Shown here piece by piece: positions 1 to 60,093 of a stretch of DNA of 64,000 nucleotides (positions are counted from its first letter, which is position 1; each line of letters starts with the position of its first letter). The notes beneath the pieces were generated by a model. That model saw nothing but the letters and a program-made list of their open reading frames with translations. It searched no databases and was not told the DNA's origin. Location of the stretch: positions 124,001-188,000 of the IMG/VR virus record IMGVR_UViG_3300012988_000001. The stretch is one strand, 5' to 3'. A program made the translations under genes and the position numbers.

Positions 1-2
1 TC

Positions 3-233
3 CACAACAACGGTGGTGAGGAATTCTTGTACAAAGTACTTGAGTACTTCAACATTCAGCGTGATACGGATGGTGAGCTAGAAGACCTAATTGTGAAAGT
101 GTACGATAAATTTGAAGGCACTGTGATTGGTGATATTGACCAGATGTTGAAAGACGGAACTTTAGAGCCTAAAGAAATCCGTGCATATGTGTCGAATCTT
201 CGCACAACTGAAGTTGCGAAAATGTTCTCATAA
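3..233 (+). CDS. 3' end of a hypothetical protein (truncated by window start)
   Basis: Frame is open from position 3 (HNNGGEEFLYKV...) to TAA at 231-233; the TTG at 27 is probably internal. Confidence 0.75.
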   Translation, partial: HNNGGEEFLYKVLEYFNIQRDTDGELEDLIVKVYDKFEGTVIGDIDQMLKDGTLEPKEIRAYVSNLRTTEVAKMFS

Positions 234-235
234 AT

Positions 236-266
236 TTGGGACAAAAAAGTAAAAATGTGATATACT
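236..266 (+). promoter_or_regulatory. Phage pre-replicative promoter (GGGACA-N17-TATACT, extended -10)
   Basis: TTGGGACAAA 236-245, TGTGA, TATACT 261-266; one of six copies of this motif. Confidence 0.8.
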
Positions 267-4398: not shown

Positions 4399-7062
4399 AT
4401 GGCTGAATTATTATCACCCGGTGTAAGTGTAACCGTCACAGACGAAAGTATTTCTGCACAGGCCGCACCCGGTACTGTGCCACTTTTTGTCATTGCAACC
4501 GCTCAGGACAAACTAGTTCCCGGTAGTTCTTCTATCGCTTCTGGTACACTAAAAGCGAATGCTGGTAAGTTACAACTTATTACCTCACAGAAAAACGCAC
4601 TAGACGTTTATGGTTCCCCAGTGTTCCAGCAACATCTAGGCTCCGTAGTACAAGGTGACGAGCTAAACGAGTATGGCCTCCACGGTCTATACAGTTATAT
4701 GGGGATTGCTAACCGTGCATATGTTGTACGTGCTGATCTTGATCTAGCTCAACTAGCACCAAGTGCTAGTGAGCCAACTGGTGATGTACCTAACGGTACT
4801 CTATGGTTCGATACTTTCGCTACACAAGTGGAAGCGTATGTCTCTAATAAAGACAACCCACAAAGTTTTTATGACTGGACTTTAAAACCAGTTCGCATCG
4901 TTAGTGCTGAGAACATTAGTGATGTAAGTACAGTTGGTCTAAATGTTGATGACCTAGTTATTCGCCACGTTCCAAGTAACGGTCAAATGCTAGTTTACAA
5001 ATTTGATTCATCTGGTCTAGTACAGGTAGAAACCTACCTATCTCCAATTAATAAAGTACCAAACGGTTCTGCTATTCACGCAGGTGATATCTGGATTCGT
5101 GATGGATATGTTAAAAATGGTTCTAATTACTTCGGTACTCGTTTTGTTGTTAAACGTTTTGCATCTCTAACCAAGACATGGGTTGCTATTGATACCTTTA
5201 CTGGTCAAAGTATCTATGAAGTAGAAGCGAAAACTGGAATTTCAAGCAATACTTATATTGCTGCACTATTCGATTGGGATAGTTATAGTTTCTCTCTATA
5301 TACCAAAGTAAGTAGTATTGCTGCTGCATCTGCACCTGCTCAACCATTAGGTCAAGTATCATTGGCACAGGCAACAGCAGATTGTTACCTAACTGTTAAG
5401 TATCTTAACAAATCAGTTCGTGTTCTAGCTGTACCACAAAACGCTATCATCAACTCTGCAACCGTAATTGCGGGAATGAATACTTCTGCACAACTAATCA
5501 ATGATGGTTTCACCTTCACTGCTTCTGGTAATGGTGTCGTATTCACAAACAAACTAGGTTATAGTTTTGTAGTTGAACAATCTACAGTAACAGCAGAACA
5601 AGTATTCTCTGCTTTAGAATTAGCAAAACTACAAGTTGATAGCTCTAACTATGCACTAGTTAATCCAGCAATTCTAAAAGTAACAGCAGACGCACCTCGC
5701 TCTACTGCTGCAAACGGGACTTACTGGTATGATTTCTCTAACTCTGATAACTTAACTGTCACACTATATACTGCAAACTTAAGTACTGAATCTTGGGATC
5801 TAATTGCTCAAAATAACATGTATGTTCAAGTTGATGAGCCAGCTACAGATCGTGATTTCTGGGTAGTTCCACTATCTCAGGGCATTGATGGTTATGAGTT
5901 CTATCGTGCAGTAAACGGTGAATGGCGTAAACTTGATCAAACAGATCAAAGTACTCTAAACGGTATGATCTTTGAAGATTTCAATGATTCTGTTCCAAGT
6001 GCAAATCTATACCAAAACGGCATGTTAGCAGTTGACCTAGGCAATACTGAAGGTGTTGTTAAACAAATGGTTAATGGTTCATGGAAAGTGGTTAGTGGTG
6101 TTAGTCTAGATGGTGCTGCTAATTTCGGTCGCAACGCACAACGTCAAATCATCGTTGAAGCACTAGCTGCTGTCATCGTTGGAAACGAAGCTATTCGTTC
6201 AGAGTTCATCGACTTTAACCTAATGTGTTCACCGGGTTATGTAGAACTTCTAGATGAGTTCGTAACACTAAACACTGATCGTAAAGAAACCGCATTTATT
6301 GTTACCGATGTTCCTGCACGTCTAACTCCAAGCAGTCAGGCAATTCAAGAATGGGCTACTAATGCTAACAACGCTCCAAGTAATGGTGACGTAGGTCGTA
6401 CCACTGCGTATGCTTATGCTGCACAATACATGGGCTGGTGCTTAAGTACTAACGTTGATGGTTCAGAAGTTGCTGTACCGGGAAGTACTATTGCTATGCG
6501 TACCTACGCTTATAGTGATTCTGTTTCTTATGTATGGTTCCCACCTGCTGGTACTCAACGTGGTGTTGTAAGTAACGCTGCTTCTGTAGGTTACATTAAC
6601 ACTGAAGGTGAATATACTCCAGTAGTATATAACAACGGTCAACGTGATACCATGTACGTGAATAAGATTAACCCGATTGCGATGCGTCCAAACCGTGGCT
6701 TACTAGTATTTGGAGACAAAACTCTAGCCGCTGATGATGGTAGTGCTCTAAGCCGTGTAAACGTAGCTCGTCTAGTTGTTTACATTCGTCGTCAACTTGA
6801 GATTCTAGCTGATCCGTTCCTATTCCGTCTAAACACTGCAAGTACTCGTCAAGAGTTTACTGGTGTAGTAAACAGCTTCCTAGCTGAAATTCTACAACTA
6901 AACGGTCTATATGACTTCTTAGTAGTGTGTGATGAATCCAACAACACCCCAACTCGTATCGACAGAAACGAACTATGGATGGACATTGCGATTCAACCAG
7001 TACGTAGTATTAACTTTATCTACATTCCAATCCGTATTGAGAAAACTGCTTCGGCATCTTAA
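4399..7062 (+). CDS. gp18: Contractile tail sheath protein
   Basis: LLSPGVSVTVTDES N-terminus; WFPPAGTQRG, INPI, GDKTL, RVNVARL, CDESNNTP...IQPVRSINFIYI sheath C-terminus. Confidence 0.97.
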   Translation: MAELLSPGVSVTVTDESISAQAAPGTVPLFVIATAQDKLVPGSSSIASGTLKANAGKLQLITSQKNALDVYGSPVFQQHLGSVVQGDELNEYGLHGLYSYMGIANRAYVVRADLDLAQLAPSASEPTGDVPNGTLWFDTFATQVEAYVSNKDNPQSFYDWTLKPVRIVSAENISDVSTVGLNVDDLVIRHVPSNGQMLVYKFDSSGLVQVETYLSPINKVPNGSAIHAGDIWIRDGYVKNGSNYFGTRFVVKRFASLTKTWVAIDTFTGQSIYEVEAKTGISSNTYIAALFDWDSYSFSLYTKVSSIAAASAPAQPLGQVSLAQATADCYLTVKYLNKSVRVLAVPQNAIINSATVIAGMNTSAQLINDGFTFTASGNGVVFTNKLGYSFVVEQSTVTAEQVFSALELAKLQVDSSNYALVNPAILKVTADAPRSTAANGTYWYDFSNSDNLTVTLYTANLSTESWDLIAQNNMYVQVDEPATDRDFWVVPLSQGIDGYEFYRAVNGEWRKLDQTDQSTLNGMIFEDFNDSVPSANLYQNGMLAVDLGNTEGVVKQMVNGSWKVVSGVSLDGAANFGRNAQRQIIVEALAAVIVGNEAIRSEFIDFNLMCSPGYVELLDEFVTLNTDRKETAFIVTDVPARLTPSSQAIQEWATNANNAPSNGDVGRTTAYAYAAQYMGWCLSTNVDGSEVAVPGSTIAMRTYAYSDSVSYVWFPPAGTQRGVVSNAASVGYINTEGEYTPVVYNNGQRDTMYVNKINPIAMRPNRGLLVFGDKTLAADDGSALSRVNVARLVVYIRRQLEILADPFLFRLNTASTRQEFTGVVNSFLAEILQLNGLYDFLVVCDESNNTPTRIDRNELWMDIAIQPVRSINFIYIPIRIEKTASAS

Positions 7063-13448: not shown

Positions 13449-14783
13449 ATGACTAAAAAAATTAATGAAGCATCAATCAAGGTTGATGTTAACGGCTTAG
13501 AATCAGCAGATTTTGAAACTCTATCCCGTATGCTTGCTCTAGCGGGTCAAGCTGAAAGTAATACTGGTTCCGTATCCGGTCCTAGTACTGGTGGTGGTCT
13601 TCCACCACTAAAACCAATGGACTTTGATAGTATTGGGGGTTCAGAAGAAACTCAACCTATTATGGACCCTGCTGATGCTATGGCAGCAGATAGTCCTGCT
13701 GATGGTGCTGGTGATCTAGGTGCAGCTATTGATGATTTAGCAGGTACAGTATCTGATTTTGGTGCTGATACAGAAGAAGCTGAAATGGGTCTTGACATGG
13801 ACGGTGGTCCTAGTGTAGAATCTGAATCTGATTTCGAAGATGAAGGGCTAGCTGATGAAGTTGGGGCTGATGATATCAGCATGGAACTTGATGATGATGG
13901 TGAAGATTTCGATATGAACAGTATGTCTGGTCTTGCAAATATGGTAGAATCACTATTCTTTGAGGATGATTCCGCAGCAGAAGATGTTGTAGATACCGAT
14001 GAAGAAGAAGACACCGATTTGGATGATGCTGAAGAAGAAGCTGCTGCTTCCGAATTAGATGAAGGACAAATCCTCCCAGACCTATCACTTGATGAGGATT
14101 CATCACAAGATGAACTTGACAACGCACATGGCCCGTACCGTTCTGAAGCTGGTGCTCGCGATGACGCAGAAGCATCAGTTGGGGGTGATTTCATTATTAT
14201 TCCATCTAGAGATGGGTATTACTGGAAACAAAAAGAAGCTGATGGTAGTCAAATGGTTGGACCTTATCAATCAGAAGCTGGTGCACGTGATGATGCGGAA
14301 GCCAAGTTAGGTACTCTAGATTTCTTCATTCACCGTCGCCCTGATGGATATTACTATTCTAAAAATCAGAGTGGTCAAGGTATGTTTGAAAGTGCTGATG
14401 GTAAACTAAATGGTCCTTTCCAAACAGAACGTCAAGCAGTTGAAGATGGACAATCCAGTACTAATGGTATTGAGGGCGATCATTTCATTGTTGTACCACA
14501 AGGTAATGCATATTACTGGAAACGTGTTATGCAAGAAGAACTTCAGAATGAACCTGAACCACACTTTGCAGATACTGATGGTATTGAAAATTCCCGTCAC
14601 AACTATCGCCATAAGCGTACTGCTCTAGGTGACAATCCACTTCTACATAATGTTCGTGAATCAGAAGAAGTAGATGCTGACAACGACAAAGAAGATGATA
14701 ATGACGATGAAGATGTTGAAGATATCTGCGAAAGTCTAAATGCAGCATATGCTAAGTTCATCGGAGGTCTAAATGGCAAATAA
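13449..14783 (+). CDS. Highly acidic putative prohead core/internal protein with three ~40-aa repeats
   Basis: D/E-rich; GP(Y/F)xSExxAxxD...F.I....GYY(W/Y) x3; multiple hydrophobic-x-E|S/A sites. Confidence 0.75.
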   Translation: MTKKINEASIKVDVNGLESADFETLSRMLALAGQAESNTGSVSGPSTGGGLPPLKPMDFDSIGGSEETQPIMDPADAMAADSPADGAGDLGAAIDDLAGTVSDFGADTEEAEMGLDMDGGPSVESESDFEDEGLADEVGADDISMELDDDGEDFDMNSMSGLANMVESLFFEDDSAAEDVVDTDEEEDTDLDDAEEEAAASELDEGQILPDLSLDEDSSQDELDNAHGPYRSEAGARDDAEASVGGDFIIIPSRDGYYWKQKEADGSQMVGPYQSEAGARDDAEAKLGTLDFFIHRRPDGYYYSKNQSGQGMFESADGKLNGPFQTERQAVEDGQSSTNGIEGDHFIVVPQGNAYYWKRVMQEELQNEPEPHFADTDGIENSRHNYRHKRTALGDNPLLHNVRESEEVDADNDKEDDNDDEDVEDICESLNAAYAKFIGGLNGK

Positions 14784-15614: not shown

Positions 15615-15645
15615 TTGGGACAAAACGACAACCTTGTGATATAAT
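15615..15645 (+). promoter_or_regulatory. Phage pre-replicative promoter (GGGACA-N17-TATAAT)
   Basis: GGGACA 15617-15622, TGTGA, TATAAT 15640-15645. Confidence 0.85.
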
Positions 15646-15680
15646 AAACGCATGTTAAGAAACACAGTATGGAACACGAC

Positions 15681-15721
15681 AAGACACTGGCAGTTAGAAG
15701 TAACACAGTGTCTTTTCTTTT
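15681..15721 (+). terminator. Terminator/attenuator-like hairpin in the 5' leader of the MoxR gene
   Basis: AAGACACTG...GTTA-GAAG-TAAC...CAGTGTCTT followed by TTCTTTT. Confidence 0.6.
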
Positions 15722-15781
15722 GCTCAAGGATTGAGTGACAAACCAAACTATTTTTTATAACCCAAATGAGGAAATATATCA

Positions 15782-17110
15782 ATGAGCAAATCTAACGACC
15801 TACTAAACATGACTCTATCTCCTAAACAAACTCTAGTTGCAATGGCAGTTGCAGACCGTGTTCAGGATAGTCTAATGCTTTGGGGTGCACCCGGCATTGG
15901 TAAGTCAGCGGTAGCACTACAGTATGCTAATAAGATGTATCCACTACGTAAAGACAACCTAGATAAGCTAGAGTTCATGCGTAACCAAATCGAAGAAGAA
16001 GAAGATGCAGCACAGAAAGCACAGCTACAGCGTGAGTACAAAGCATTCGATGCTAAACTACTAGACCAAGATAGCAACTTCATCGACTTCCGTCTATCAC
16101 AAATCGACCCAACCGACCTACGTGGTATTCCAGTACCAGAGAAAGTGTACATCGGTATGGATGGTAAGTCTCTAATCGAGTCTGACCTAAAAGAAGTCAA
16201 AGAATATATCGCTGAAACTGCCGTAGTTTGGGCTGCACCAAAAGTACTAAAACTACCAGCGGATTGGAAAGGCGTTATCATGTTTGACGAAATCAACTCT
16301 GCAATGCCAATCGTTCAGGCAGCTTCTTATCAGCTAATCCTAGACCGTTGCGTTGGTGAGATGAAACTACCTAAGACTGCACTAATCCTAGCAGCAGGTA
16401 ACCGTGAAAATGATGGTGGTGTAACCTTCACCCTAGCAACTCCACTACGTGACCGTATGACTCACATTGAAATGGAGCCAAACCATCAGGATTGGATTGA
16501 TGATTACGCAATCGGCAAGCGTCTAAACGCAGCAACCGTAGCATTCATCAACAACACCGGGTCTAAGTACTTCAACACACTAAGCCCTAACGATCCTTCT
16601 CACTCTGGCGGTACTTCCCCACGCTCTTGGGAACGTGTATCTCAGTATGAAGATCTAAACGATGGTTCTATCGATAAAGCTGTTTATCGTGCACTAATCG
16701 CAGGTCGTATCGGTGAAGGTGCAGCAACTGTGTACATTGAGTACGTAGAAAACGTATCTAAACTACCAGATACTATGAAGATTCTAAGTGGTGAAATCAA
16801 AAAGCTAGACGAAAATCTAGATATCTCTGCAAACTACTTCGTGTCTCTAAACCTAGTGTATAAGATTATCGATCTATACCAACAAAAGACCGAGAAGAAA
16901 ATCGAAGTTGAAGAATGGAGCCGCCTAGCGAACAACTTCATCATCTTCCTAGAGAACAACTTCTCTGAATACTACGCAGAACTAGCTGTACTATCCATTC
17001 GTACACTAACTCAAGCACGTGTTCAACTATCTTACAAAGAAGTCCCAGCGTTCCAAGACTTCGTTAAACGTTATCAAGACCTAGTGCGTCGTGCACGTTC
17101 CCTAGGCTAA
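15782..17110 (+). CDS. MoxR-like AAA+ ATPase (AAA_5 type)
   Basis: Walker A GAPGIGKS, DFRLSQIDPTDLRGIP, Walker B IMFDE, AAGN sensor, PLRDR, SPRSW. Confidence 0.92.
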   Translation: MSKSNDLLNMTLSPKQTLVAMAVADRVQDSLMLWGAPGIGKSAVALQYANKMYPLRKDNLDKLEFMRNQIEEEEDAAQKAQLQREYKAFDAKLLDQDSNFIDFRLSQIDPTDLRGIPVPEKVYIGMDGKSLIESDLKEVKEYIAETAVVWAAPKVLKLPADWKGVIMFDEINSAMPIVQAASYQLILDRCVGEMKLPKTALILAAGNRENDGGVTFTLATPLRDRMTHIEMEPNHQDWIDDYAIGKRLNAATVAFINNTGSKYFNTLSPNDPSHSGGTSPRSWERVSQYEDLNDGSIDKAVYRALIAGRIGEGAATVYIEYVENVSKLPDTMKILSGEIKKLDENLDISANYFVSLNLVYKIIDLYQQKTEKKIEVEEWSRLANNFIIFLENNFSEYYAELAVLSIRTLTQARVQLSYKEVPAFQDFVKRYQDLVRRARSLG

Positions 17111-17120
17111 GATAGCAACT

Positions 17121-17149
17121 GAGGATGGCAAATGCCGTCCTCTCTTTTT
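17121..17149 (+). terminator. Intra-operon terminator between AAA and VWA genes
   Basis: GAGGATGGCA/TGCCGTCCTC stem followed by TCTTTTT. Confidence 0.7.
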
Positions 17150-17174
17150 AATCCACACACGATGAGGAAATAAC

Positions 17175-18605
17175 ATGACTGCTCCAGAGCGTAATAACGA
17201 AGTATCTCCAGAAGTAGCTAAGGAATGTATCAACCGTATGATCCTAGCCCGTACTTCTCTAATGCTAGGCCATCCATTCTTTGGTGTACTAGCGTCACGT
17301 CTACGTCCAACACCTAACAACACTTGGTGTCGTACTATGGCAGTAGATGGTAAACACCTATTCTATAACGTAGAATTCGTAATGGGTATCCAAGATGAAT
17401 CCAAACGTGAAGAGTACGAAGAAAAGCTACGTGCAGCAATTCCTGACATTACTGATGCTCAGATTGCAGAAGCCACGAATGGTCTAACCGACCAGAACCT
17501 AATTGCTGTTATCTGCCACGAGATCCTACACTGTGCGTATGATCACTTCCTACGCCGTGGTAATCGCGACCCTAAAGCATGGAACGTTGCAGCAGACTAC
17601 GCTATCAACCAAATGCTCGTTCGTGATAAGATTGGTCAGATTTGTGATAACTGGCTATATGACAAGAAGTTTGACGGCATGACTGCCGAAGAAATCTATG
17701 CTAAACTACTCGAAGAAGCTCAACAGCAGCAGGGCGAAGGAGAGGGCGATGGTGACGGTGAAGGTGACGACGAGGGTCAAGGCCAAGGTGGTGGCGGTCA
17801 AGGCAAAGGCGAGTTCCGTGGGACGTTTGGTGGTGGTACAGTAGACCAGCATGATATTCCAGAAGAAGGCCAGCCGAAAGATGCTGACGGTAACCCTATT
17901 GACGGTGATAAACGCCGTGAATATATGGAAGACTTCAAAACTGCAATGATGAACGCTGCTCGTGCTGGTTCAGCACCTGCTGAGATTCAACGCATGATCA
18001 AAGACTTCCAAGAGCCTAAGATTGATTGGCGTTCTAAGCTAGCCCGTACACTACGTTCTTGGATGAAGAGTGATTCCTCATTCATGACTCCAAATCGTCG
18101 TTCTTGGTCTTCTGGCTTCGGCAGCACTGGCTCTTTCTATGGTTGTCCAATCTTCCCCGGCCTAAAACCGGATGAAGATATCGATATTGCAATTGCCCTA
18201 GATGCTTCCGGGTCTATTAGTACTGAAATGCTAAAAGACTTCATCGGTGAAGTAATTGGTATTACCAAGCAATTCAAACAGTATAAGATTCGTATCATGA
18301 CTTTCGATACTCAAGTTTATACTGTAAAAGACTACAAAACTGGTGACGAGAAGAAGATTCTAGAATATCCAGTACACGGTGGTGGTGGTACTGACTTTAA
18401 AGCAGTTTGGGACCACATGAAACAAGATGACTACAAGCCTAAGCAGCTAATCATGTTCACAGATGGTGAGCCTTGGGACTCTTGGGGTGATCCTGACTAC
18501 TGTAAGACCCTCTTTGTGATTCACTCGAATCCTAAGAAGGAATCACCGTTCGGTGAAACAGTTCACTACGAATGGGAAGCAAAAAACTCTCCTGCTCGTC
18601 GGTAA
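17175..18605 (+). CDS. HEXXH metallopeptidase + VWA domain protein (DUF2201-like), partner of the MoxR ATPase
   Basis: HEILH, WNVAADYAIN, Gly/acidic linker, MIDAS DASGS, GGGTDF, FTDG. Confidence 0.9.
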   Translation: MTAPERNNEVSPEVAKECINRMILARTSLMLGHPFFGVLASRLRPTPNNTWCRTMAVDGKHLFYNVEFVMGIQDESKREEYEEKLRAAIPDITDAQIAEATNGLTDQNLIAVICHEILHCAYDHFLRRGNRDPKAWNVAADYAINQMLVRDKIGQICDNWLYDKKFDGMTAEEIYAKLLEEAQQQQGEGEGDGDGEGDDEGQGQGGGGQGKGEFRGTFGGGTVDQHDIPEEGQPKDADGNPIDGDKRREYMEDFKTAMMNAARAGSAPAEIQRMIKDFQEPKIDWRSKLARTLRSWMKSDSSFMTPNRRSWSSGFGSTGSFYGCPIFPGLKPDEDIDIAIALDASGSISTEMLKDFIGEVIGITKQFKQYKIRIMTFDTQVYTVKDYKTGDEKKILEYPVHGGGGTDFKAVWDHMKQDDYKPKQLIMFTDGEPWDSWGDPDYCKTLFVIHSNPKKESPFGETVHYEWEAKNSPARR

Positions 18606-18644: not shown

Positions 18645-18675
18645 TTGGGACAAACTCAAGAAAATGTGCTATAAT
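18645..18675 (+). promoter_or_regulatory. Phage pre-replicative promoter (GGGACA-N17-TATAAT)
   Basis: GGGACA 18647-18652, TGTGC, TATAAT 18670-18675. Confidence 0.85.
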
Positions 18676-18713: not shown

Positions 18714-18959
18714 ATGAGTACTGAAAACCTAAAAGACATTTCGATTGATATCGTTGATATCATCAATGCTGCTAAAATCATGGAACAAGCTGTTAAAAAT
18801 AACGCTTTCTCCGTTGAAGATCTAGTTGAAGTGACCCCAGTTGTTGCTCGCTTTATTGCAGTAGCAAACCAACTAATTGAACGTCATAATGCAGAAGTTG
18901 AAGCACAAGAAGCAGCCGATGCCGAAGCAGGTCCAACACCTGAAGCAGATGGGGAGTAA
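18714..18959 (+). CDS. Hypothetical protein
   Basis: GGAG SD, first gene after the promoter. Confidence 0.8.
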   Translation: MSTENLKDISIDIVDIINAAKIMEQAVKNNAFSVEDLVEVTPVVARFIAVANQLIERHNAEVEAQEAADAEAGPTPEADGE

Positions 18960-18964
18960 TCAAT

Positions 18965-19609
18965 ATGGCTATTACTCGTCACTGTGGTGTTGTTCGTGCA
19001 ACTGGCTCTCGTGTTTTCATCGTGTGGAGACAACTTCCTGACCAACCGGGCCACTGCCTAGCAATCTACCAAGACTCACTACCAGAACAGTACGCATATG
19101 CTGTGCAAGAACTCGTTCTAGGTCGTGGTCAATCATCCCTTGATCTATGGGATGTGATGGACAAGGTTGGTGTACTAGATGGTCGCAAGATGCTTGATGT
19201 ACTTCACCAATTGAGTTACCTACGTAAACTATCAACTACTGATGTTGATATGCACGTTGGTAATGGTGCTAAGATTGCACTAAACCTACTAAATGACCAG
19301 CTAGACGAACAAAAAGTTCATACTGATGGTAAAGTAAAAGAATACAATCCTTTTGACAATCAGCCACAAACTGATTTCCAAGAAAGTGGTGGTATCGTTG
19401 CTAAACTACTTTCCGATGCTGCTCAATACGAGCAACTAGCGAAAGAAACTTATGAACGTGCTTATGCTCTAGACCCTTCAATGCGTCCACAAGCAGCAGC
19501 AATTATCGAAGCTGATCCTAATCAACCATTTACTATTAGTATTCCTCAAGGTACAACTCAAGCGAAAGCAATTGAGATCCTAAAGAAAGCACTAAAAGAG
19601 CAAAAATAA
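18965..19609 (+). CDS. Hypothetical protein
   Basis: GGGGAG SD, 214-aa ORF with strong phage codon bias. Confidence 0.85.
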   Translation: MAITRHCGVVRATGSRVFIVWRQLPDQPGHCLAIYQDSLPEQYAYAVQELVLGRGQSSLDLWDVMDKVGVLDGRKMLDVLHQLSYLRKLSTTDVDMHVGNGAKIALNLLNDQLDEQKVHTDGKVKEYNPFDNQPQTDFQESGGIVAKLLSDAAQYEQLAKETYERAYALDPSMRPQAAAIIEADPNQPFTISIPQGTTQAKAIEILKKALKEQK

Positions 19610-36204: not shown

Positions 36205-36246
36205 TATTTATTTTTTTGGGACAAACGAACATTTATGTGATATAAT
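36205..36246. promoter_or_regulatory. Composite divergent promoter: late TAAATA (minus) + GGGACA-N17-TATAAT (plus)
   Basis: TATTTA 36205-36210, N7, GGGACA 36218-36223, TATAAT 36241-36246. Confidence 0.85.
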
Positions 36247-36286: not shown

Positions 36287-38557
36287 ATGAGTTCCAGTTT
36301 CCAAGATTTGTTCAATGATAGTAAAGCACTAGCCCAACAGCTAGGCCATCAATTCATGACCGTAGACCACCTAAGTGCAACTGTGTTAAAGGTTCAAAGT
36401 GTTAAAGACGCACTAGAATCTTTCTCAATTGACACTAATATCCTAGGTCAACGTATCGAAGATTATCTTCGTGAAGTACCACCTCCTGAGCTACCTGTGT
36501 CCGTCCAAGAACAAATTGGAAGCGACCAAGTACCGGTATCAGTCCTTGTTACTCGTGTGATGAACGAGCTACAAAAACAAGCTGTAATTGAACAGCTAAA
36601 AAATGATGATTTCGTAGTAGAAGGTTTCTTTGTACTATTCGAATGTCTATCATTCTCAAACACTGCACTAGAAGCAGCATTGAAAGAACAATCTCTAACA
36701 CGTGCAGAAGTGGCCCGTTCACTACAAACATATGTTAGTAATGTTCGTTCAGATCTTGATTTAACAAAGACTGTAAAAAACGAACCGAAAGGAGGTCGTG
36801 TGTCTCAACAACAACCATCATCTGGTAAGAAATCTATTGAAGATTACACTACCAACCTAACCGACCTTGCACGTGAGGGTAAACTAGACCCAATGATTGG
36901 TCGTGAGAAAGAGCTACTAGCACTAATTGAGACTCTATCTCGTCGTACTAAGAAAAACCCATGCCTTGCAGGTGAAGCAGGTGTTGGTAAAACCCAAATC
37001 ATCGACGGTCTAGCACAAGCAATCGTTGATGGTAATGTCCCAGAACACATGAAAGAACTAACTATTCTTTCCCTAGATATGGGTTCATTCACTGCTGGTA
37101 CTAAGTATCGTGGTGAATTCGAAGAACGCGTTGACAACTTCCTAAAAGAACTAAAGAAACGTGAAAATACCATCATCTTCATCGATGAAATCCATACTAT
37201 CATGGGTGCTGGTTCTTCATCTTCTGGTACTATGGATATGAGCAACCTAATCAAACCTGCTCTATCTCGTGGTGAGATTAGCGTTATCGGTGCAACCACA
37301 TATGACGAATATCGTCAACACATCGAAAAAGATGGTGCACTATCTCGTCGTTTCATGAAAATTGACGTAGTTGAACCAACTTATGATGAAACTGCTCAAA
37401 TCGTAAAAGGTATCCAATCCAAATACGAAGAGTTCCACGGTGTTACCTACACTGAAGATGCAATTGCAGCAGTAATGGAACTATCCAAGAAGCACCTACA
37501 GTCTCGTCGTTATCCTGATAAGGCAATCGATCTACTTGATGCTTCAGCAGCCAAGAACCGCACTAAGGTTGGTACTGATTTAGTAGTTAAACGTTCTGAT
37601 ATCGAAGAAGTAGTTGCAAGTATTGCTAACCTAGACCTTTCTGTGGTAGCATGTACTGAAAGTACTCGTATGAATGAACTACCAGACCTACTACGCAAAC
37701 GTGTATTCGGTCAAGAAGAAGCAGTACAGAAACTTGTTGATAACGTAATGGTTGCACGTGCTGGCCTACGTTCTGACGCAAGCGTACAAGGTGCATTCAT
37801 GTTTGTCGGACCATCTGGTACTGGTAAAACTGAGATCTCCAAAGCATTAGCTGATTCAATGGGTTCTAAGCTAATTCGTTTCGACATGTCAGAGTTCTCA
37901 CAGGAACATACTGTAGCTAAACTAATCGGCTCACCACCGGGTTATGTTGGTCACGACACTGGTAACGGTCTACTACTAGATCAAATCGAATCGCATCCTA
38001 ATGCAGTTCTATTGCTAGATGAGATCGAGAAAGCACACCCTAAAGTACTACTAACCTTCCTTCAAGTACTAGATGAAGGTCGTCTAACTGGTTCTAAAGG
38101 TAAAACTGTGTTCTTCAATAACGTAACTGTTATTATGACTACTAACCTAGGGGCTAAAGACTCTGAGAAACGTAGCATGAGTATGGGTAGTTCTGAAACT
38201 GGTCAGGATAAGGCTATTAAAGCATTCCTACCACCAGAATTCCTAAACCGTATTGATTCAATCGTGAAGTTCAAAGAACTAAGCACTGAAGCAATCGACA
38301 GCGTTATTGACAAGTTCATGAAAGAAGTACAAGATTCCGTAGCTGGTCGTAAAGTTGCAATCGTCCTACAAGATGATGCTCGTGCTTGGTTGGCAGCGAA
38401 CGGTGTACAGAAAGGCATGGGTGCACGTCCAATGAAACGCACCATTGAACAAAACATCAAGCTACCACTAGCACGTGAAATCCTTTGTGGTTCACTACAA
38501 AATGGCGGCGTTGCTGAGTTCACAATCGAAGACGGCAAGATTGTTCTTCAAAAATAA
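36287..38557 (+). CDS. clpA: ClpA-like Hsp100 AAA+ unfoldase
   Basis: Clp N-domain; GEAGVGKT/IFIDE and GPSGTGKT/LLLDE; AGTKYRGEFEER; PPGYVG; GARP; no ClpB M-domain. Confidence 0.92.
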   Translation: MSSSFQDLFNDSKALAQQLGHQFMTVDHLSATVLKVQSVKDALESFSIDTNILGQRIEDYLREVPPPELPVSVQEQIGSDQVPVSVLVTRVMNELQKQAVIEQLKNDDFVVEGFFVLFECLSFSNTALEAALKEQSLTRAEVARSLQTYVSNVRSDLDLTKTVKNEPKGGRVSQQQPSSGKKSIEDYTTNLTDLAREGKLDPMIGREKELLALIETLSRRTKKNPCLAGEAGVGKTQIIDGLAQAIVDGNVPEHMKELTILSLDMGSFTAGTKYRGEFEERVDNFLKELKKRENTIIFIDEIHTIMGAGSSSSGTMDMSNLIKPALSRGEISVIGATTYDEYRQHIEKDGALSRRFMKIDVVEPTYDETAQIVKGIQSKYEEFHGVTYTEDAIAAVMELSKKHLQSRRYPDKAIDLLDASAAKNRTKVGTDLVVKRSDIEEVVASIANLDLSVVACTESTRMNELPDLLRKRVFGQEEAVQKLVDNVMVARAGLRSDASVQGAFMFVGPSGTGKTEISKALADSMGSKLIRFDMSEFSQEHTVAKLIGSPPGYVGHDTGNGLLLDQIESHPNAVLLLDEIEKAHPKVLLTFLQVLDEGRLTGSKGKTVFFNNVTVIMTTNLGAKDSEKRSMSMGSSETGQDKAIKAFLPPEFLNRIDSIVKFKELSTEAIDSVIDKFMKEVQDSVAGRKVAIVLQDDARAWLAANGVQKGMGARPMKRTIEQNIKLPLAREILCGSLQNGGVAEFTIEDGKIVLQK

Positions 38558-38591: not shown

Positions 38592-41500
38592 TTATCCTTT
38601 AATTAGCGTAGGTAGGATAGTACCCGGAATTTGTAGTGATGAACTATAAGTACTTAAAGGTATTACTGGATAATTATTTGCATAATCAACCATCTTATCT
38701 TCTTTCCCTAGGTTCAATCCTGTTCCCAAATATCCATCAGGATAGTAATTCTCAACTGTTCCATTAATAGCACGTAAAGCGTTACCGTTTTTACGTAGAA
38801 GCATCTGCTCTCCATTTAAGGAAATAACATCACCTTCTGTACTATTCGCACCACTTACCACATTACCATCAACTGACACTGATCCAACATTTGTTGGTTG
38901 TGAAACCACGGTAATGTTTTCAACGCTGTCATTGGTAATTACTGTAACTCTACTAGGAGAGGTAACATAAACATCGTCAACTAGTGGTAATGCATATGTC
39001 CAATAAGCGTCTGTAGTGTCTGTAGCTGGTACAAGTACTGGCTGGATTGTTGAAGTGTTGAATTCATAAACGAATATTTGTAGTGAATCGGTCATTTTAG
39101 TACGAACAAGTTCGCCTAGAACACCTTCACCATAAATCGGCTGGTAATAGCCGTGGTCAACACCATCAATAATTTCATTAGAAATATACCACACATCATA
39201 ATCATCATCGCTGAATCCATCAGTGTATTCTCCACCATCCAACATAACATCATAGAACACGTCATAATCCATCGCATCGACCGCGTAGGAGCGATTTGCG
39301 GCATATTTGACATAACTACCAGCATTGAATTCGGCATCGTTAAAACTCGTTACACGAAGCACAGTGATGCTTGTGTGATCTGAAACAGCCGACCATTCTG
39401 AACCATTAGTTGAATATGTTTGTGAGAATACTAATCCACCGATTGTAACGTTACGTCCACTTACCGCAGTAACTTTAAACATAGTAGGTCTGTTTCCAGT
39501 TCTAATATTGTTTTCAGTTAGGATAGTATGGAAAGTACCGTCAGCCGCAACAGCATCATAATCTTTACCTTCTGGGGTAAACACCATAACATTATCACCA
39601 ACTTTCAATCCATGATTGCTTCCTAGTCTAACAACACCATTTACGTTAATTACATCATACACATGGTTGACGTACTTAATTTCATCATGATACATGTTAG
39701 TTCTATCCATCAATGCAATTGCTTCTGCATAGCGAGGAATACTCACAACTGCTTCTGCTTTGTTATATGGGTTGAGGGTAATGAAACCTTCAACTTGGAA
39801 GTTACCTTGATCTTTAAGTTGTGGCATATTTGCCGCATCGTATGAATACCCATCAACCGTAAATCTAAGTTGAGACATATTTTGCTTGTTCGGGTTTAAC
39901 TCTGAAATGTCAATGAAGACTGAATCTTGAGTTGTGTTTACCGTATCAATAGCAGATAGCTCAATTCTCTTAGTTTGTGATTCTAGTGCTAAATTATCAA
40001 ATGAGTTCATGTCATCATAATAAACATTGGAGTTAAATGAAGTCATGATTTGTTGATAATCAGAGTACAATGGATTGTTTTTATCCATTGGTAGATCATC
40101 TAGATTTGGTTCACCAACAAATACGTTATCACCTTGAGTGATGAATTGGTCTTGCATGAAGTCTTCTAGACTTTGATTGAATGGTACAGTGAAATAATCC
40201 CCTGCATCATTACGAATCGATACCAACTTACGTGGAACCATTACCATACAGAATGCATCAAAATCGCGATTATCAAGAATTGCTTCTGCAAACGCATAGT
40301 GATCTGAATTATCCTTATAGTAACTATTACGCATAGCTGTTAGTACTAAAAGAGTGTCGTTGTAGTGATCAGTATTAATTGTCACTCCACCAATGCCATC
40401 ATCTTCTGTTGTTTCAATCATCCAGCAATATAAACCGTACTCATGTGCCAAATAGAAGTAAATGTCATTATCTGAATAGGTTGGGTTCTGAGCTTTCGCC
40501 ATAGAAACAAACTTATCAAATAATTCTCTGGTATGCATTACATAACCAAAGTTTTCACCGTTACTTGGTGCGAAACCAAATGGTAGTCTAGTATTTGGGT
40601 TATCATCAATAGATATACCTTTAAACGGACAATCAACTTGATCTTCAATTGCATCAATATCATAAGAAGTATAAAGTCTCAATCTATTAGAAAGAGTATT
40701 AAACATTCTATATTTTTGCATAATATCAATAGAGTCATCGCTTGATAGAACTTCATTGGTTGCACTAATTACATCTTTTGTGAATTGTTCAGTAGCTGGA
40801 ACATCCTGTTCTAATGTTTCGTACATAGCTTGTATACCTGCGGCAACACTAGTAGACATATTAAAATCTGGATATTTTTGAGTTAGAATCGAACCAATTG
40901 CATTATTGATTTGACTTTCATTTGCCACTGGGAACGTATATTCATAACGTTGTAATTTATAATGGCTTCCTTTTGTTAAGAAATCTTGCTCATTACTCTG
41001 GAATTGCTTATTAACATCATCTAGAATTGCTGCTGCTGGCATATCTTCATCAGGTACACACTGAACATTATCATAATGCATAATAACATCAATTTCTTGG
41101 AATCTTCTATTCGGTAATTCGAAATCACTCGGTAGAGAACCATGAATTTCCCATTTATTGGTTACGGTGTTAAATTGTGCATATTCATAATCCCAGATAT
41201 CAGATTGTGTTTTAACCCACTTACCATTAACGAAAATATATCCAGTTGGATCTAAATCATTTAGTAAGCCATTAATTTCATCACTATCAGAAGTTTTCTG
41301 TTCAATCTGAGAACGAATCTTAGTACGATATGGTTTTACTTCTTCGAAATAAGATACGATTTGTCCAATTAGGTCTTCACTATTAGAATAGTTCTGTTTT
41401 AGAGATTGGTCTAAACCAACAATAAAGATATATGAAGTTTTAAACACCCAATCAACCACTTGTTGTTCAGTATGAACATACTTAACCATATCAAACACAA

Positions 41501-59156: not shown

Positions 59157-59197
59157 TATTTATAATCTTGGGACAAAATGAAAAAATGTGATATAAT
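59157..59197. promoter_or_regulatory. Composite divergent promoter: late TATAAATA (minus) + GGGACA-N16-TATAAT (plus)
   Basis: TATTTA 59157-59162, N7, GGGACA 59170-59175, TATAAT 59192-59197. Confidence 0.85.
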
Positions 59198-59247
59198 AGT
59201 GAGGTGGGACACGGATCGTCCTATGAATTTACATGGAGTGTTACAAT

Positions 59248-60093
59248 ATGATAACCAAACCGAAGCGTAAGAAATATTTGAATAACGCTGATTTACTAAG
59301 AGAAATTCATCTCAGTAAAATGTCATACTGCTGGCTCATTGATGAGTCGTATAGCATGTATGATTACATAGTCTTTGATGTTAGTGAGATTGATGAAGAA
59401 TTGCTTGAGAAAGCAAGTGCTGCACGTATCAAACGTCTTAACAATGAAACAATTGAAAATATTCGTTCAACACAGGGTCTTTCTGCTAAAAAAGCTAAAG
59501 AATACGCTGATGCACACGGATTAGTACTAACCACTGTACCTATTGATGAAGTTGTTATTCGCGTAATTACCGATGAACATATTCCCGATGAGGGTACTGG
59601 TAAGATTCGTGTTAACTTCGAACCATTCAAACATTACATCGTAGATGATAATGCCGTTTTTTATGAAGTTGCTCGTTCACACTGGCTAGGTGATACCGAT
59701 ACCGGGGAGTTTTGTTTAACTCACGGAAGAATGACCAATGAATTAGGAAAAATGTTCATTAAACTTGCAGAAGAAATTTCCCATAAAACTAATTACCGAA
59801 ATTATACGTACTTAGATGAAATGATGGGTGATGCAAGAATACAATTAGTCAAAAACGCATTGCTTTTTAAAGAAAGCATTTTGTATAAAAAAGACAAACC
59901 TGCTGTTCAATTAAATCCTTTCTCTTACTATACATCTTTCGTCAATAATGCATTCCGTTCTGTTTTGAATACAGAAAAGAATGTACGCAATATTCGTGAT
60001 GACTTACTTGAATTAAATGGCTTTACGCCAAGTCACACACGACAAATTGAAATTGAAATGAAAATGATGGAAGGTAAGAATGGCTCTATTTGA
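59248..60093 (+). CDS. gp55: Late-transcription sigma factor (T4 gp55-like) with a large insertion
   Basis: YLNNADLL, LGKMFIKLAE...NYRNYTYLDEM.GDA, NPFSYYTSFVNNAF; ATG 59248 has a GGAG SD. Confidence 0.9.
   Translation: MITKPKRKKYLNNADLLREIHLSKMSYCWLIDESYSMYDYIVFDVSEIDEELLEKASAARIKRLNNETIENIRSTQGLSAKKAKEYADAHGLVLTTVPIDEVVIRVITDEHIPDEGTGKIRVNFEPFKHYIVDDNAVFYEVARSHWLGDTDTGEFCLTHGRMTNELGKMFIKLAEEISHKTNYRNYTYLDEMMGDARIQLVKNALLFKESILYKKDKPAVQLNPFSYYTSFVNNAFRSVLNTEKNVRNIRDDLLELNGFTPSHTRQIEIEMKMMEGKNGSI

What the first reader, a model, noticed from the sequence alone, without database searches (positions are those of the whole stretch)
15782..17110. Extreme CTA-Leu codon usage: 44 of 45 leucines in the MoxR ATPase
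Seen: reading the gene codon by codon gives 44 CTA and 1 CTT. CTA also dominates in the VWA, clpA and sheath genes, whereas genes such as 8733 and 11969 use much TTA/TTG/CTT; CTG is rare everywhere. Established: CUA is a rare codon and CUG the major one in enterobacteria. Inference: the infected cell's Leu-tRNA pool is rewired (a phage tRNA-Leu(UAG), possibly with loss of host tRNA-Leu(CAG)). This would let a single codon act as an expression dial, and it marks the MoxR ATPase as one of the most highly expressed phage proteins.
Basis: partly seen in the sequence, partly recalled or inferred. Interest (0 to 1): 0.65.

Follow-up and report, generated by a model that had tools for sequence, protein, structure and literature searches.

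The report
Leucine codon inverted in jumbo phage
This jumbo phage writes leucine in its strongly expressed middle and late genes almost only as CTA, the rarest leucine codon of its enterobacterial hosts, while its early genes use the host's favourite CTG and it carries no tRNA for CTA, so the infected cell probably reads leucine differently from a healthy one.

Summary
The count is exact: 44 CTA + 1 CTT of 45 Leu codons in the 442-aa ATPase gene (15782-17110). That makes it the most CTA-rich of about 540 ORFs in a complete 366-kb Rak2/121Q-like jumbo phage.

The bias is selection on decoding:
- In-frame CTG has O/E 0.20; in-frame CTA has O/E 1.9. Off-frame and intergenic values are about 1.
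- The CTA fraction tracks the enterobacterial optimal-codon axis (CGT, GGT, ATC, TTC).
- The gene ranks 1/289 on that axis even with Leu excluded.
- CTA is kept at 40/41 conserved Leu sites versus a relative, against 66% at other four-fold sites.

New finding: a Leu-specific switch between gene classes.
- Genes behind sigma70-like "early" promoters at the genome ends have CTG 44 / CTA 5.
- Genes behind a TTGGGACA-N-TGTGATATAAT promoter class, including this gene, have CTG 1 / CTA 235.
- The split is family-wide.
- T4 gp23 and E. coli ribosomal genes use CTG and no CTA.

The relative CBB does have one. The abundance link is weak (rho 0.22).

A phage-induced change of host Leu decoding is the best inference, but it is unproven.

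The parts
15615..15645 (+). M-type promoter of the ATPase gene: TTGGGACA box, 17-nt spacer counted from GGGACA, TG-extended -10 (TGTGATATAAT)
   Evidence: This motif class occurs 25 times in the genome, always on the + strand. The consensus scan scores GGGACA-17-TATAAT at 10/12 with a TG extension, at 15617-15645. The same motif stands upstream of the orthologue in fENko-Kae01.
15678..15722 (+). Leader hairpin (stem AAGACACUG / CAGUGUCUU) followed by a U-rich tract, in the roughly 135-nt 5' leader
   Evidence: RNA fold of 15646-15790 (z = -1.85, modest). By eye, phage A4 has an equivalent hairpin with changed stem letters (GGAACTG / CAGTTCC) (sequences printed). Function unknown.
15782..17110 (+). 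AAA+ ATPase gene (442 aa, MoxR-like): 44 CTA + 1 CTT; the most codon-biased gene of the genome
   Evidence: PHROG 1297 'ATPase', E = 7e-102. Pfam AAA, AAA_5 and AAA_3 score below their thresholds. Distant homologues carry PF07726 and PF07728 and are named MoxR-like.
17121..17152 (+). Intrinsic terminator-like hairpin (9 pairs, 6 G-C) plus T-run, 10 nt after the stop codon
17175..18605 (+). Partner gene: DUF2201_N (metallopeptidase-like) plus VWA-like domain protein, 20/23 Leu as CTA
   Evidence: Pfam PF13203 E = 2e-36, PF09967 E = 3.5e-21. Codon counts.
18645..18675 (+). M-type promoter upstream of ORFs 18714-18959 and 18965-19609 (the latter 16/23 CTA)
   Evidence: (genome 142645).
36216..36246 (+). 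M-type promoter of the ClpA/ClpB-like gene
   Evidence: genome 160216.
36287..38557 (+). ClpA/ClpB-like double-AAA+ gene, 54/74 Leu as CTA, 0 CTG; rank 3 on the non-Leu bias axis
4399..7062 (+). Tail sheath gene, 48/70 Leu as CTA, 0 CTG; an ATAAATAAT late-type motif lies upstream
236..266 (+). M-type promoter (variant -10, GATATACT) upstream of ORF 298-741
   Evidence: genome 124236.
59168..59197 (+). M-type promoter upstream of ORF 59233-60093
   Evidence: genome 183168.

Best explanation
The ATPase gene is the extreme end of a family-wide, selection-driven codon regime.

Shown:
- CTA is the translationally preferred Leu codon, and CTG a strongly avoided one, for genes of the phage's middle and late programme.
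- The small early genes at the genome ends, behind sigma70-type promoters, use the host's preferred CTG.
- For every other amino acid, the highly biased genes follow the ordinary enterobacterial optimal set, which is read by abundant host tRNAs.
- Only Leu is inverted.

Inferred:
- After the early phase, Leu decoding in the infected cell differs from that of the uninfected host.
- CUG reading by the abundant host tRNA-Leu(CAG) becomes poor.
- CUA reading becomes the best option.
- This is not achieved by a phage tRNA-Leu(UAG), which this phage lacks.
- It must therefore rest on the host's own tRNA-Leu(UAG), on a phage-induced loss or alteration of host tRNA-Leu, or on both.

The ATPase itself is a stand-alone, strongly optimised transcription unit of the middle-type promoter class. 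It encodes a MoxR-like AAA+ protein paired with a VWA-like protein, and it is probably made in large amounts.
For: Frame-specific:
- In-frame CTG O/E is 0.20, against 1.28 and 1.0 off-frame and 0.91 intergenic.
- In-frame CTA O/E is 1.9, against 0.97, 0.72 and 0.89.

Same axis as classic optimal codons:
- CTA fraction correlates positively with CGT, TTC, ATC, AAC and GGT.
- It correlates negatively with ATA, AGA, AGG and GGA, and not with GC3.
- A PCA of codon usage without Leu puts the ATPase first of 289 genes. The capsid, sheath, ClpA-like and VWA-like genes are all in the top 10.

Leu-specific switch:
- From terminal to central genes CTG falls from 0.26 to 0.02 (13-fold).
- Other G-ending codons change less than 2-fold.

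Promoter-linked:
- E-type genes have CTG 44 / CTA 5. M-type genes have CTG 1 / CTA 235. Fisher p = 7e-45.
- The CBB paper independently describes the same three promoter classes and takes the terminal RpoD-like class for early genes (PMC5259590).

Actively maintained:
- Versus fENko-Kae01, the ATPase keeps the same Leu codon at 40/41 sites, against 96/146 at other four-fold sites (p = 8e-6).
- Genome-wide synonymous sites are close to saturation.

Same gene, other promoter, other codon:
- In E. coli phage A4 the orthologue sits behind two consensus TTGACA-N17-TATAAT promoters and uses CTG 23 / CTA 9.
- 19 aligned Leu sites are CTA here and CTG in A4.

Family-wide and family-specific:
- Capsid genes of A4 and CBB are 25/30 and 25/29 CTA with 0 CTG.
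- T4 gp23 on E. coli is CTG 17/29 with CTA 0.
- E. coli ribosomal and EF genes are CTG 260/318 with CTA 0.

Abundance:
- In fENko-Kae01, MS-detected proteins have median CTA 0.32 against 0.17 for undetected ones (p = 4e-13).

Precedent:
- Vibrio phage 2.275.O carries a 47%-identical homologue of this ATPase.
- It is reported to shift from host-pool-adapted early genes to a different pool later in infection (Yang et al. 2021, as summarised in PMC12482277).
Against: - No tRNA-level data exist for this family, so the altered-decoding step is inference only.
- No phage gene for a CUA decoder, a TilS-like enzyme (PF01171) or a LeuRS was found.
- The temporal meaning of the promoter classes rests on analogy with T4 and the CBB paper, not on transcriptomics.
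- Within MS-detected proteins, CTA fraction predicts abundance only weakly (rho 0.22). The measurement comes from a filtered phage preparation of a relative, not from infected cells.
- ORFs were called by a simple greedy longest-ORF rule, so some short genes may be wrong.
- The host of this particular phage is unknown.
Confidence: 0.6

Rival explanations
1. One reading: the phage supplies its own tRNA-Leu(UAG), which makes CUA efficient.
For: A family member with many tRNAs, Pectobacterium phage CBB, does encode tRNA-Leu(UAG) plus two Leu(UAA) and one Leu(CAA). Homologous tRNA-Leu genes occur in several other family members, such as GAP32 and fHe-Yen9-04.
Against: - ARAGORN and the Rfam tRNA model find 13-15 tRNAs in this complete genome. 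The only Leu isoacceptor is UAA.
- A relaxed ARAGORN scan and a BLAST with CBB's tRNA-Leu(UAG) find no copy or remnant here, in fENko-Kae01 or in A4.
- The lineages lacking the tRNA have more CTA-dominated genes (63 and 49) than CBB (22).
Confidence: 0.03
2. The host natively prefers CUA, so the phage simply mirrors its host.
For: The host of this particular phage is not known.
Against: - Orthologues with 45/47 and 46/47 CTA belong to phages of S. Typhi and K. aerogenes.
- The capsid gene of E. coli phage A4 is 25/30 CTA.
- E. coli highly expressed genes have 0/318 CTA.
- The phage's own early-promoter genes prefer CTG.
Confidence: 0.04
3. Relic: an ancestor carried tRNA-Leu(UAG), the codon bias evolved then, and it has not yet decayed since the tRNA was lost.
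For: tRNA-Leu(UAG) is present in CBB and probably in other deep branches of the family.
Against: - Synonymous sites between this phage and fENko-Kae01 are close to saturation. Rare codons are retained at only 20-30%.
- Both phages lack the tRNA, yet both keep about 98% CTA in the ATPase.
- The Leu codon is identical at 40/41 sites, against 66% at other four-fold sites. That is ongoing purifying selection.
Confidence: 0.06
4. No change in the tRNA pool. CUA is favoured because host mRNAs hardly use it, so the host's tRNA-Leu(UAG) is free of competition. Alternatively, CTA is a deliberate slow codon that gates translation in time (a brake or dial, like TTA with bldA in Streptomyces).
For: - CUA is nearly unused by highly expressed host genes.
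- CTA-rich and CTG-rich genes fall into different promoter classes, as a timing device would.
Against: - T4 meets the same host situation yet uses CTG and no CTA in gp23.
- CTA co-occurs with the fastest-type codons for all other amino acids, and it is highest in genes whose products are abundant. A brake at 10% of all codons fits poorly with that.
- Neither idea explains why CTG is excluded as strictly as AGG (7 CTG against 1,071 CTA in the CTA-rich genes).
Confidence: 0.15
5. DNA-level cause: mutation bias, avoidance of a CTG/CAG-containing restriction or repair motif, or selection for TAG stops on the antisense strand.
For: The genome is AT-rich (about 38% GC), and G-ending codons are generally under-used.
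Against: - Depletion of CTG and excess of CTA are confined to the reading frame.
- CAG, the complement of CTG, is not depleted.
- Adjacent genes on one strand differ sharply. In A4 a neighbouring structural gene is CTA 13 / CTG 0, while the ATPase next to it is CTG 23.
- The switch is 13-fold for Leu and less than 2-fold for other boxes.
Confidence: 0.03

Closest known systems
Temporal shift of codon adaptation in tRNA-bearing lytic phages (Vibrio phage 2.275.O, Yang et al. 2021, as summarised in PMC12482277; T4 late genes and T4 tRNAs, from memory)
   Same: - Early genes look adapted to the host pool and later genes to a different pool.
- 2.275.O is a jumbo phage that shares a 47%-identical homologue of this ATPase.
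   Different: - Here the later genes are not adapted to the phage's own tRNAs. The most biased genes avoid AGA, GGA, ACA and TTA, which the phage tRNAs read. They use CGT, GGT, ACT and TCT, which host tRNAs read.
- The shift is confined to one amino acid.
- The favoured codon has no phage tRNA.
Phage tRNA 'codon compensation' (phage tRNA genes matching codons that are common in the phage and rare in the host)
   Same: In CBB the CTA-rich late genes coexist with a phage tRNA-Leu(UAG).
   Different: This phage, fENko-Kae01, SE_PL and A4 lack that tRNA, and yet three of them show the most extreme CTA use.
Changes of host leucine tRNA after T-even infection (Kano-Sueoka and Sueoka; Yudelevich, cited from memory; the abstract of PMC3328318 calls the changes minor and strain-specific)
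   Same: A phage-induced, Leu-specific change of the host tRNA set soon after infection is the kind of event that would explain CTG exclusion from later genes.
   Different: - T4's own major late gene still uses CTG (17/29) and no CTA.
- No responsible gene is known, and none was identified here.
bldA (tRNA-Leu UAA) / TTA codon control in Streptomyces (from memory)
   Same: A single Leu codon marks a class of genes with a particular expression time.
   Different: There the codon is rare and limiting, and it occurs once or a few times in regulators. Here CTA makes up 10% of all codons of the most optimised genes and behaves as the preferred codon.
MoxR-type AAA+ ATPase with VWA-domain partner (for example RavA-ViaA, CbbQ-CbbO, NorQ-NorD; from memory)
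   Same: - A single AAA+ module with Walker A (GAPGIGKS) and Walker B (FDEIN).
- An adjacent gene with a VWA-like domain.
- Distant homologues carry the MoxR Pfam domain AAA_3.
   Different: - The protein itself is below every Pfam threshold.
- It has a roughly 90-residue insertion between the Walker motifs.
- Its partner also carries a metallopeptidase-like DUF2201_N domain.
- Its function in the phage is unknown.

Membership tests
Translationally selected ('optimal') codon | The excess is confined to the reading frame | tested here: met
   CTA O/E is 1.9 in frame, against 0.97 and 0.72 off-frame and 0.89 intergenic. CTG is 0.20 against 1.28, 1.0 and 0.91.
Translationally selected ('optimal') codon | It co-varies across genes with the optimal codons of other amino acids | tested here: met
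   Spearman correlations. The non-Leu PCA axis 1 correlates with CTA (|rho| = 0.56), and the ATPase ranks 1/289.
Translationally selected ('optimal') codon | It is conserved more than other synonymous sites between diverged relatives | tested here: met
   40/41 against 96/146, p = 8e-6.
Translationally selected ('optimal') codon | It is enriched in abundant proteins | tested here: inconclusive
   In fENko-Kae01, MS-detected versus undetected proteins give p = 4e-13. Within detected proteins rho is only 0.22, and the sample was a filtered phage preparation.
Translationally selected ('optimal') codon | It matches the most abundant cognate tRNA | not testable with these tools
   tRNA levels in infected cells are unknown. 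In uninfected E. coli, tRNA-Leu(UAG) comes from a single gene and is a minor species (established knowledge, not measured here).
Phage tRNA codon compensation | The phage encodes a tRNA cognate to the over-used codon | tested here: not met
   No tRNA-Leu(UAG) by ARAGORN, by the Rfam model RF00005, by a relaxed scan, or by BLAST with CBB's copy.
Late genes adapted to the phage's own tRNA pool ('all-destructive infection' model) | Highly expressed later genes prefer codons read by phage-encoded tRNAs | tested here: not met
   The phage tRNAs read AGA, GGA, ACA, TTA, TCA and AGT. The most biased genes avoid exactly these codons.
Late genes adapted to the phage's own tRNA pool ('all-destructive infection' model) | Early genes are adapted to the host pool | tested here: met
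   In E-type promoter genes CTG is the top Leu codon, and GGC, CGC, AGC and CAG are raised.
MoxR-family AAA+ ATPase | Pfam AAA_3 (PF07726) or AAA_5 (PF07728) above the gathering score | tested here: not met
   AAA_5 scores 18.9 bits (cut-off 22). AAA_3 scores 14.2 bits (cut-off 27).
MoxR-family AAA+ ATPase | Sequence homology to proteins that carry the MoxR domain | tested here: met
   Homologues at about 30% identity (E = 1e-40 to 1e-50) carry PF07726 and PF07728, and some are named MoxR-like ATPase.
MoxR-family AAA+ ATPase | Adjacent VWA-domain partner gene | tested here: met
   The gene at 17175-18605 has PF09967 (VWA-like) at E = 3.5e-21 and PF00092 at a weak score.
MoxR-family AAA+ ATPase | Hexameric AAA+ fold with the MoxR-type helix-2 insert and beta-hairpin arrangement | not tested
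   The ATPase was not folded.

The most novel reading that the evidence does not exclude
The phage re-aims the host's most abundant leucine tRNA.

- A phage enzyme made early would alter the wobble base C34 of host tRNA-Leu(CAG), by deamination or another modification. Alternatively it would destroy that tRNA while boosting tRNA-Leu(UAG).
- CUA would then become the best-read Leu codon and CUG a poorly read one.
- One act would both shut off CUG-rich host translation and give the phage's CTA-written middle and late genes a private decoding channel.
- LeuRS ignores the anticodon (established knowledge), so charging would be unaffected.

A candidate worth testing is the family-restricted 124-aa cytidine-deaminase-fold protein at genome 86591-86965:
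- It has an intact HAE...PCxxC site.
- It overlaps the phage TyrRS gene.
- It is itself written with CTG (4 of 9 Leu).
- Nothing shown here links it to tRNA.
Probability: 0.1. Interest if true: 0.95.

Novelty: new variant of a known kind. Interest (0 to 1): 0.64.

Why it matters
Phage codon usage is usually read as host mimicry plus compensation by phage tRNAs. This case differs in several ways:
- A whole family of enterobacterial jumbo phages selects, in its best-expressed genes, the codon that is the textbook 'rare codon' of its hosts.
- The same genes exclude the host's best Leu codon as strictly as they exclude AGG.
- Most members have no tRNA for the favoured codon.
- The early genes do the opposite.

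This gives a clean, single-codon read-out of a change in the translation apparatus during infection. It can be tested directly with tRNA-seq, ribosome profiling and paired reporters.

If the cause is a phage factor acting on host tRNA-Leu, it would be a new host-shutoff and translation-partitioning mechanism.

There are practical consequences too. Genes of these phages will express poorly in E. coli unless leuW is supplied. The CTG/CTA ratio, together with two promoter motifs, can be used to assign temporal classes to hundreds of unknown genes.

Tried and rejected
- **Hidden tRNA-Leu(UAG).** ARAGORN at default and relaxed settings, the Rfam tRNA model at E <= 1, BLAST with CBB's tRNA-Leu(UAG), and inspection of odd elements at genome 301949-302034, 302041-302109 and 305172-305257 found none. 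A4's extra tRNA-like hit has a UCU loop.
- **TilS-like lysidine synthase** (PF01171): absent.
- **LeuRS-type synthetase** (PF00133): absent.
- **Deaminases.** One is an ordinary dCMP-deaminase type. The second is a small enzyme that two source annotations call TadA-like. Its model (pLDDT 94) is closest to tetrameric cytidine deaminases and blasticidin-S deaminase (TM 0.5-0.6). That neither supports nor excludes a tRNA substrate.
- **Base composition or GC3:** rejected (rho = -0.16; frame test).
- **Literature.** I found no paper reporting a CTA preference or a CTG/CTA split in Rak2-like phages. Yang et al. 2021 and the T4 genome review were not held. The T-even tRNA-Leu precedent is therefore cited from memory, apart from the abstract of PMC3328318.
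- **Possible leaderless small ORF in the ATPase leader.** It is rich in TTA, AGA and ACA. It was noticed but not pursued, and it is not conserved as an ORF in A4.
- **Not used.** The ATPase was not folded. Complex prediction and the large representative search were not needed.
Full report
**What the window is.** The window is bases 124001-188000 of a complete 366,160-bp phage genome with direct terminal repeats. The nearest public relatives of the gene in question are Salmonella phages SE_PL, 7t3 and Munch and Klebsiella phage fENko-Kae01, at about 86% nucleotide identity. E. coli Asteriusvirus phages follow at about 78%, then Pectobacterium phage CBB. This is the Rak2/121Q-like group of jumbo myoviruses. 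The host of this particular phage is not known to me.

**The observation.** The ORF 15782-17110 (+) has 442 codons. It contains 45 Leu codons: 44 CTA, 1 CTT, and no TTA, TTG, CTC or CTG.
- Among 544 ORFs called over the whole genome, Leu usage is TTA 0.245, TTG 0.16, CTT 0.18, CTC 0.06, CTA 0.31 and CTG 0.045. This gene has the highest CTA fraction of all.
- The chance of 44/45 or more is 1e-21 at the genome frequency. It is 1.3e-5 even against the pooled frequency of the most CTA-rich genes.

**It is selection on decoding, not on DNA.**
- In central genes, in-frame CTG is five-fold depleted (O/E 0.20). The same trinucleotide in the other two frames (1.28, 1.0) and in intergenic DNA (0.91) is not.
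- In-frame CTA is enriched (1.9) and is not enriched elsewhere.
- Across genes, the CTA fraction rises with CGT, TTC, ATC, AAC, GGT, TCT and CAC. It falls with ATA, AGA, AGG, GGA, TTA and TTG. It is nearly independent of GC3.
- A principal-component analysis of codon usage that leaves out all Leu codons gives a first axis with exactly those loadings.
- On that axis the ATPase is first of 289 genes. The ClpA-like gene, the major capsid gene, the VWA-like gene and the sheath gene are all in the top ten.
- So the gene is the most codon-optimised in the genome, and CTA is the Leu member of the optimal set.
- E. coli ribosomal-protein and elongation-factor genes share the same preferences for Arg, Gly, Ile, Phe and Asn. 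For Leu they are the mirror image: CTG 260/318, CTA 0/318.

**A Leu-specific switch between gene classes.**
- Along the genome, the first 20 kb and the 320-350 kb region hold many small ORFs. They use CTG for 26% and 13% of Leu, and CTA for 9% and 19%.
- The 30-320 kb body has CTG 2% and CTA 35%. The genes with at least 50% CTA have 7 CTG against 1,071 CTA.
- Other G-ending codons change by less than two-fold between these classes, so the switch is specific to Leu.
- CTG-rich and CTA-rich usage almost exclude each other: only 2 of 368 genes have both.

Two promoter-like motifs separate the classes.
- **E-type:** ACTTGCATTACTT...TACTGTATAAT, a sigma70-like -35 plus an extended -10. There are 16 copies within the first 17 kb. 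The genes downstream have CTG 44 / CTA 5.
- **M-type:** TTGGGACAAA-N-ATGTGATATAAT. There are 25 copies, all on the + strand, between 38 and 299 kb. The genes downstream have CTG 1 / CTA 235, and still 51% CTA without the ATPase.
- The contrast gives Fisher p = 7e-45.
- The ATPase has an M-type promoter at 15615-15645. So do the ClpA-like gene, a RecA-sized gene, a topoisomerase-sized gene and two phage tRNA genes.
- Genes with a T4-late-like ATAAATA motif, such as capsid and sheath, have CTA 0.37 and CTG 0.01.
- The published analysis of CBB describes the same three classes. The first is RpoD-like promoters before short ORFs near the terminal repeat, taken for early genes. The second is divergent RpoD-like promoters with a normal -10 and an altered -35, before DNA-metabolism genes. 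The third is ATAAATA before structural genes (PMC5259590).
- The temporal reading is therefore by analogy. It has not been measured here.

**Comparison across the family.**
- The ATPase orthologues of SE_PL and fENko-Kae01 have 45/47 and 46/47 CTA. fENko-Kae01 has the same E/M promoter-codon relation.
- Synonymous sites between this phage and fENko-Kae01 are near saturation. Yet in the ATPase the Leu codon is identical at 40 of 41 conserved Leu positions, against 96 of 146 at other four-fold sites (p = 8e-6). CTA is thus being maintained by selection in both lineages.
- In E. coli phage A4 the orthologue uses CTG 23 / CTA 9. Nineteen aligned Leu positions are CTA here and CTG there. A4's gene stands behind two tandem promoters with a perfect TTGACA -35.
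- A4's capsid gene is nevertheless 25/30 CTA with no CTG. A4's genes behind the GTGATATAAT -10 are mixed: CTA 0.23, CTG 0.21.
- CBB shows the same geography: ends CTG 0.24 / CTA 0.03-0.04; structural module CTA 0.24-0.37 / CTG 0.01-0.04; capsid 25/29 CTA.
- T4 on E. coli does not show it: gp23 has CTG 17/29 and CTA 0, and the T4 sheath gene mostly uses TTA.
- The CTA regime is therefore a property of this jumbo-phage family. It is not a general property of AT-rich coliphages.

**tRNAs.**
- ARAGORN finds 15 and the Rfam tRNA model finds 13 above threshold, all at genome 273.8-312.1 kb. They are Ser(ACU), Thr(UGU), Arg(UCU), Met, Ser(UGA), Tyr, Pro(UGG), Asn, Asp, Lys(UUU), Glu(UUC), Gly(UCC) and Leu(UAA).
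- There is no tRNA-Leu(UAG), and no remnant of one, here or in fENko-Kae01, SE_PL or A4. A4 has no Leu tRNA at all.
- CBB does carry tRNA-Leu(UAG), two Leu(UAA) and one Leu(CAA). Homologous tRNA-Leu genes exist in several other family members.
The lineages without it have more CTA-dominated genes (63 and 49) than CBB (22).
- The most biased genes avoid the codons that the phage tRNAs read (AGA, GGA, ACA, TTA). They use codons read by abundant host tRNAs.
- So the model in which late genes are tuned to the phage's own tRNA pool (Yang et al. 2021 for Vibrio phage 2.275.O, as summarised in PMC12482277) does not fit in its simple form. The early-host-like versus later-different logic is the same, however, and 2.275.O shares this ATPase at 47% identity.

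**Expression.**
- The fENko-Kae01 paper gives spectral counts and intensities for about 160 phage proteins from an ultrafiltered phage preparation (PMC11218385).
- I matched 138 of them to ORFs by length and order. The ATPase anchor falls at the annotated coordinates.
- The ATPase (CDS_244) has 27 spectra and intensity 1.0e6, about 23rd.
- CTA fraction versus intensity gives rho 0.22 (p = 0.01).
- The capsid protein (CTA 0.76) and several proteins with low CTA are more abundant.
- Detected proteins have a higher CTA fraction than undetected ones (median 0.32 against 0.17, p = 4e-13).
- CTA thus marks the well-expressed class, but it is not a fine dial.

**The gene itself.**
- It is a self-contained unit: M-type promoter (15615-15645), a roughly 135-nt leader with a hairpin and U-tract, the CDS, and a terminator-like hairpin with a T-run at 17121-17152.
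- The protein has Walker A (GAPGIGKS) and Walker B (FDEIN) motifs.
- It matches PHROG 1297 'ATPase'. It scores below threshold for the Pfam families AAA, AAA_5 and AAA_3.
- Homologues at about 30% identity carry the MoxR domain AAA_3.
- Its neighbour is a DUF2201_N plus VWA-like protein.
- 'MoxR-like AAA+ ATPase with a VWA partner' is a fair name. Its role in the phage is unknown.

**Mechanism.**
- Shown: CTA is selected and CTG is excluded in the M-type and late-type gene classes, CTG is preferred in the E-type class, and there is no cognate phage tRNA.
- Inferred: Leu decoding changes after the early phase.
- A mere loss of tRNA-Leu(CAG) would explain the exclusion of CTG. It would not explain why CTA beats TTA/TTG, for which the phage brings a tRNA, or CTT. 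Something must make CUA reading efficient.
- I looked for candidates. There is no TilS-like enzyme and no LeuRS. A tRNA toolkit is present: a CCA-adding enzyme, a T4 Rnl1-type ligase and a TyrRS.
- There is also a family-restricted 124-aa deaminase with an intact HAE...PCxxC site. It overlaps the TyrRS gene and is itself CTG-rich.
- Its high-confidence model is nearest to compact cytidine deaminases. This is a lead, not evidence.

**Verdict.** I rate the finding as a new variant of a known kind: temporal partition of phage codon usage. Its mechanism is open and experimentally accessible.

Noticed in passing
G000:C1:273842-273931 (outside the window); also in SE_PL and fENko-Kae01: A phage tRNA-Ser with anticodon ACU (A34). 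Its anticodon loop, CUACUAA, differs by one base from the loop I recall for E. coli tRNA-Arg(ACG), CUACGAA, the substrate of TadA. An M-type promoter lies directly upstream, at 273803.
   Followed up: partly
G000:C1:86591-86965 and 86937-88214 (outside the window): A 124-aa cytidine-deaminase-fold protein with an intact HAE...PCxxC site. It is restricted to Rak2-like jumbo phages, overlaps the start of a phage tyrosyl-tRNA synthetase gene, and is CTG-rich (4 of 9 Leu). Its model has pLDDT 94 and is nearest to tetrameric cytidine deaminases and blasticidin-S deaminase.
   Followed up: partly
whole genome; in the window at 236, 15615, 18645, 36216 and 59168: Two sharply defined promoter-like motif families: ACTTGCATTACTT..TACTGTATAAT at the genome ends, and TTGGGACAAA-N-ATGTGATATAAT in the body (all on the + strand). 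Together with the CTG/CTA ratio they could classify most unknown genes by expression time.
   Followed up: partly
window 15678-15722: A hairpin plus U-tract sits inside the ATPase 5' leader, between promoter and start codon. A4 has an equivalent hairpin with different stem letters. It could be an attenuator, a processing site or a stabiliser. A possible leaderless 28-codon ORF rich in TTA, AGA and ACA starts right after the -10 element.
   Followed up: no
L003 about 2470-2640 (Escherichia phage A4, upstream of its ATPase): Two tandem near-identical promoters with a perfect TTGACA -35 and a TG-extended -10, where this phage has a single TTGGGACA-type promoter. The change goes together with the gene's switch from CTA to CTG.
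   Followed up: partly
window 13449-14783 (+): An extremely acidic 444-aa virion-protein homologue (PHROG 15988). It carries three copies of a motif of about 45 residues (GPY.SEAGARDDAEA...G.YYWK-like).
   Followed up: no
window 38592-48611 (-): A 3,339-codon ORF with 100 CTA and 0 CTG. Its fENko-Kae01 counterpart (3,342 aa, unknown function) was detected by LC-MS/MS.
   Followed up: no
window 1-233 (3' end of a gene starting at G000:C1:123109); G000:C1:49647-50273: A phage tRNA toolkit: a CCA-adding tRNA nucleotidyltransferase (22/39 Leu as CTA) and a T4 Rnl1-type RNA ligase, beside the TyrRS and 13-15 tRNAs.
   Followed up: partly
G000:C1:301949-302034, 302041-302109, 305172-305257: Degenerate tRNA-like elements within the tRNA cluster: one with an 8-nt anticodon loop, one below the Rfam threshold, and one with a poor acceptor stem. 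None has a UAG anticodon.
   Followed up: partly
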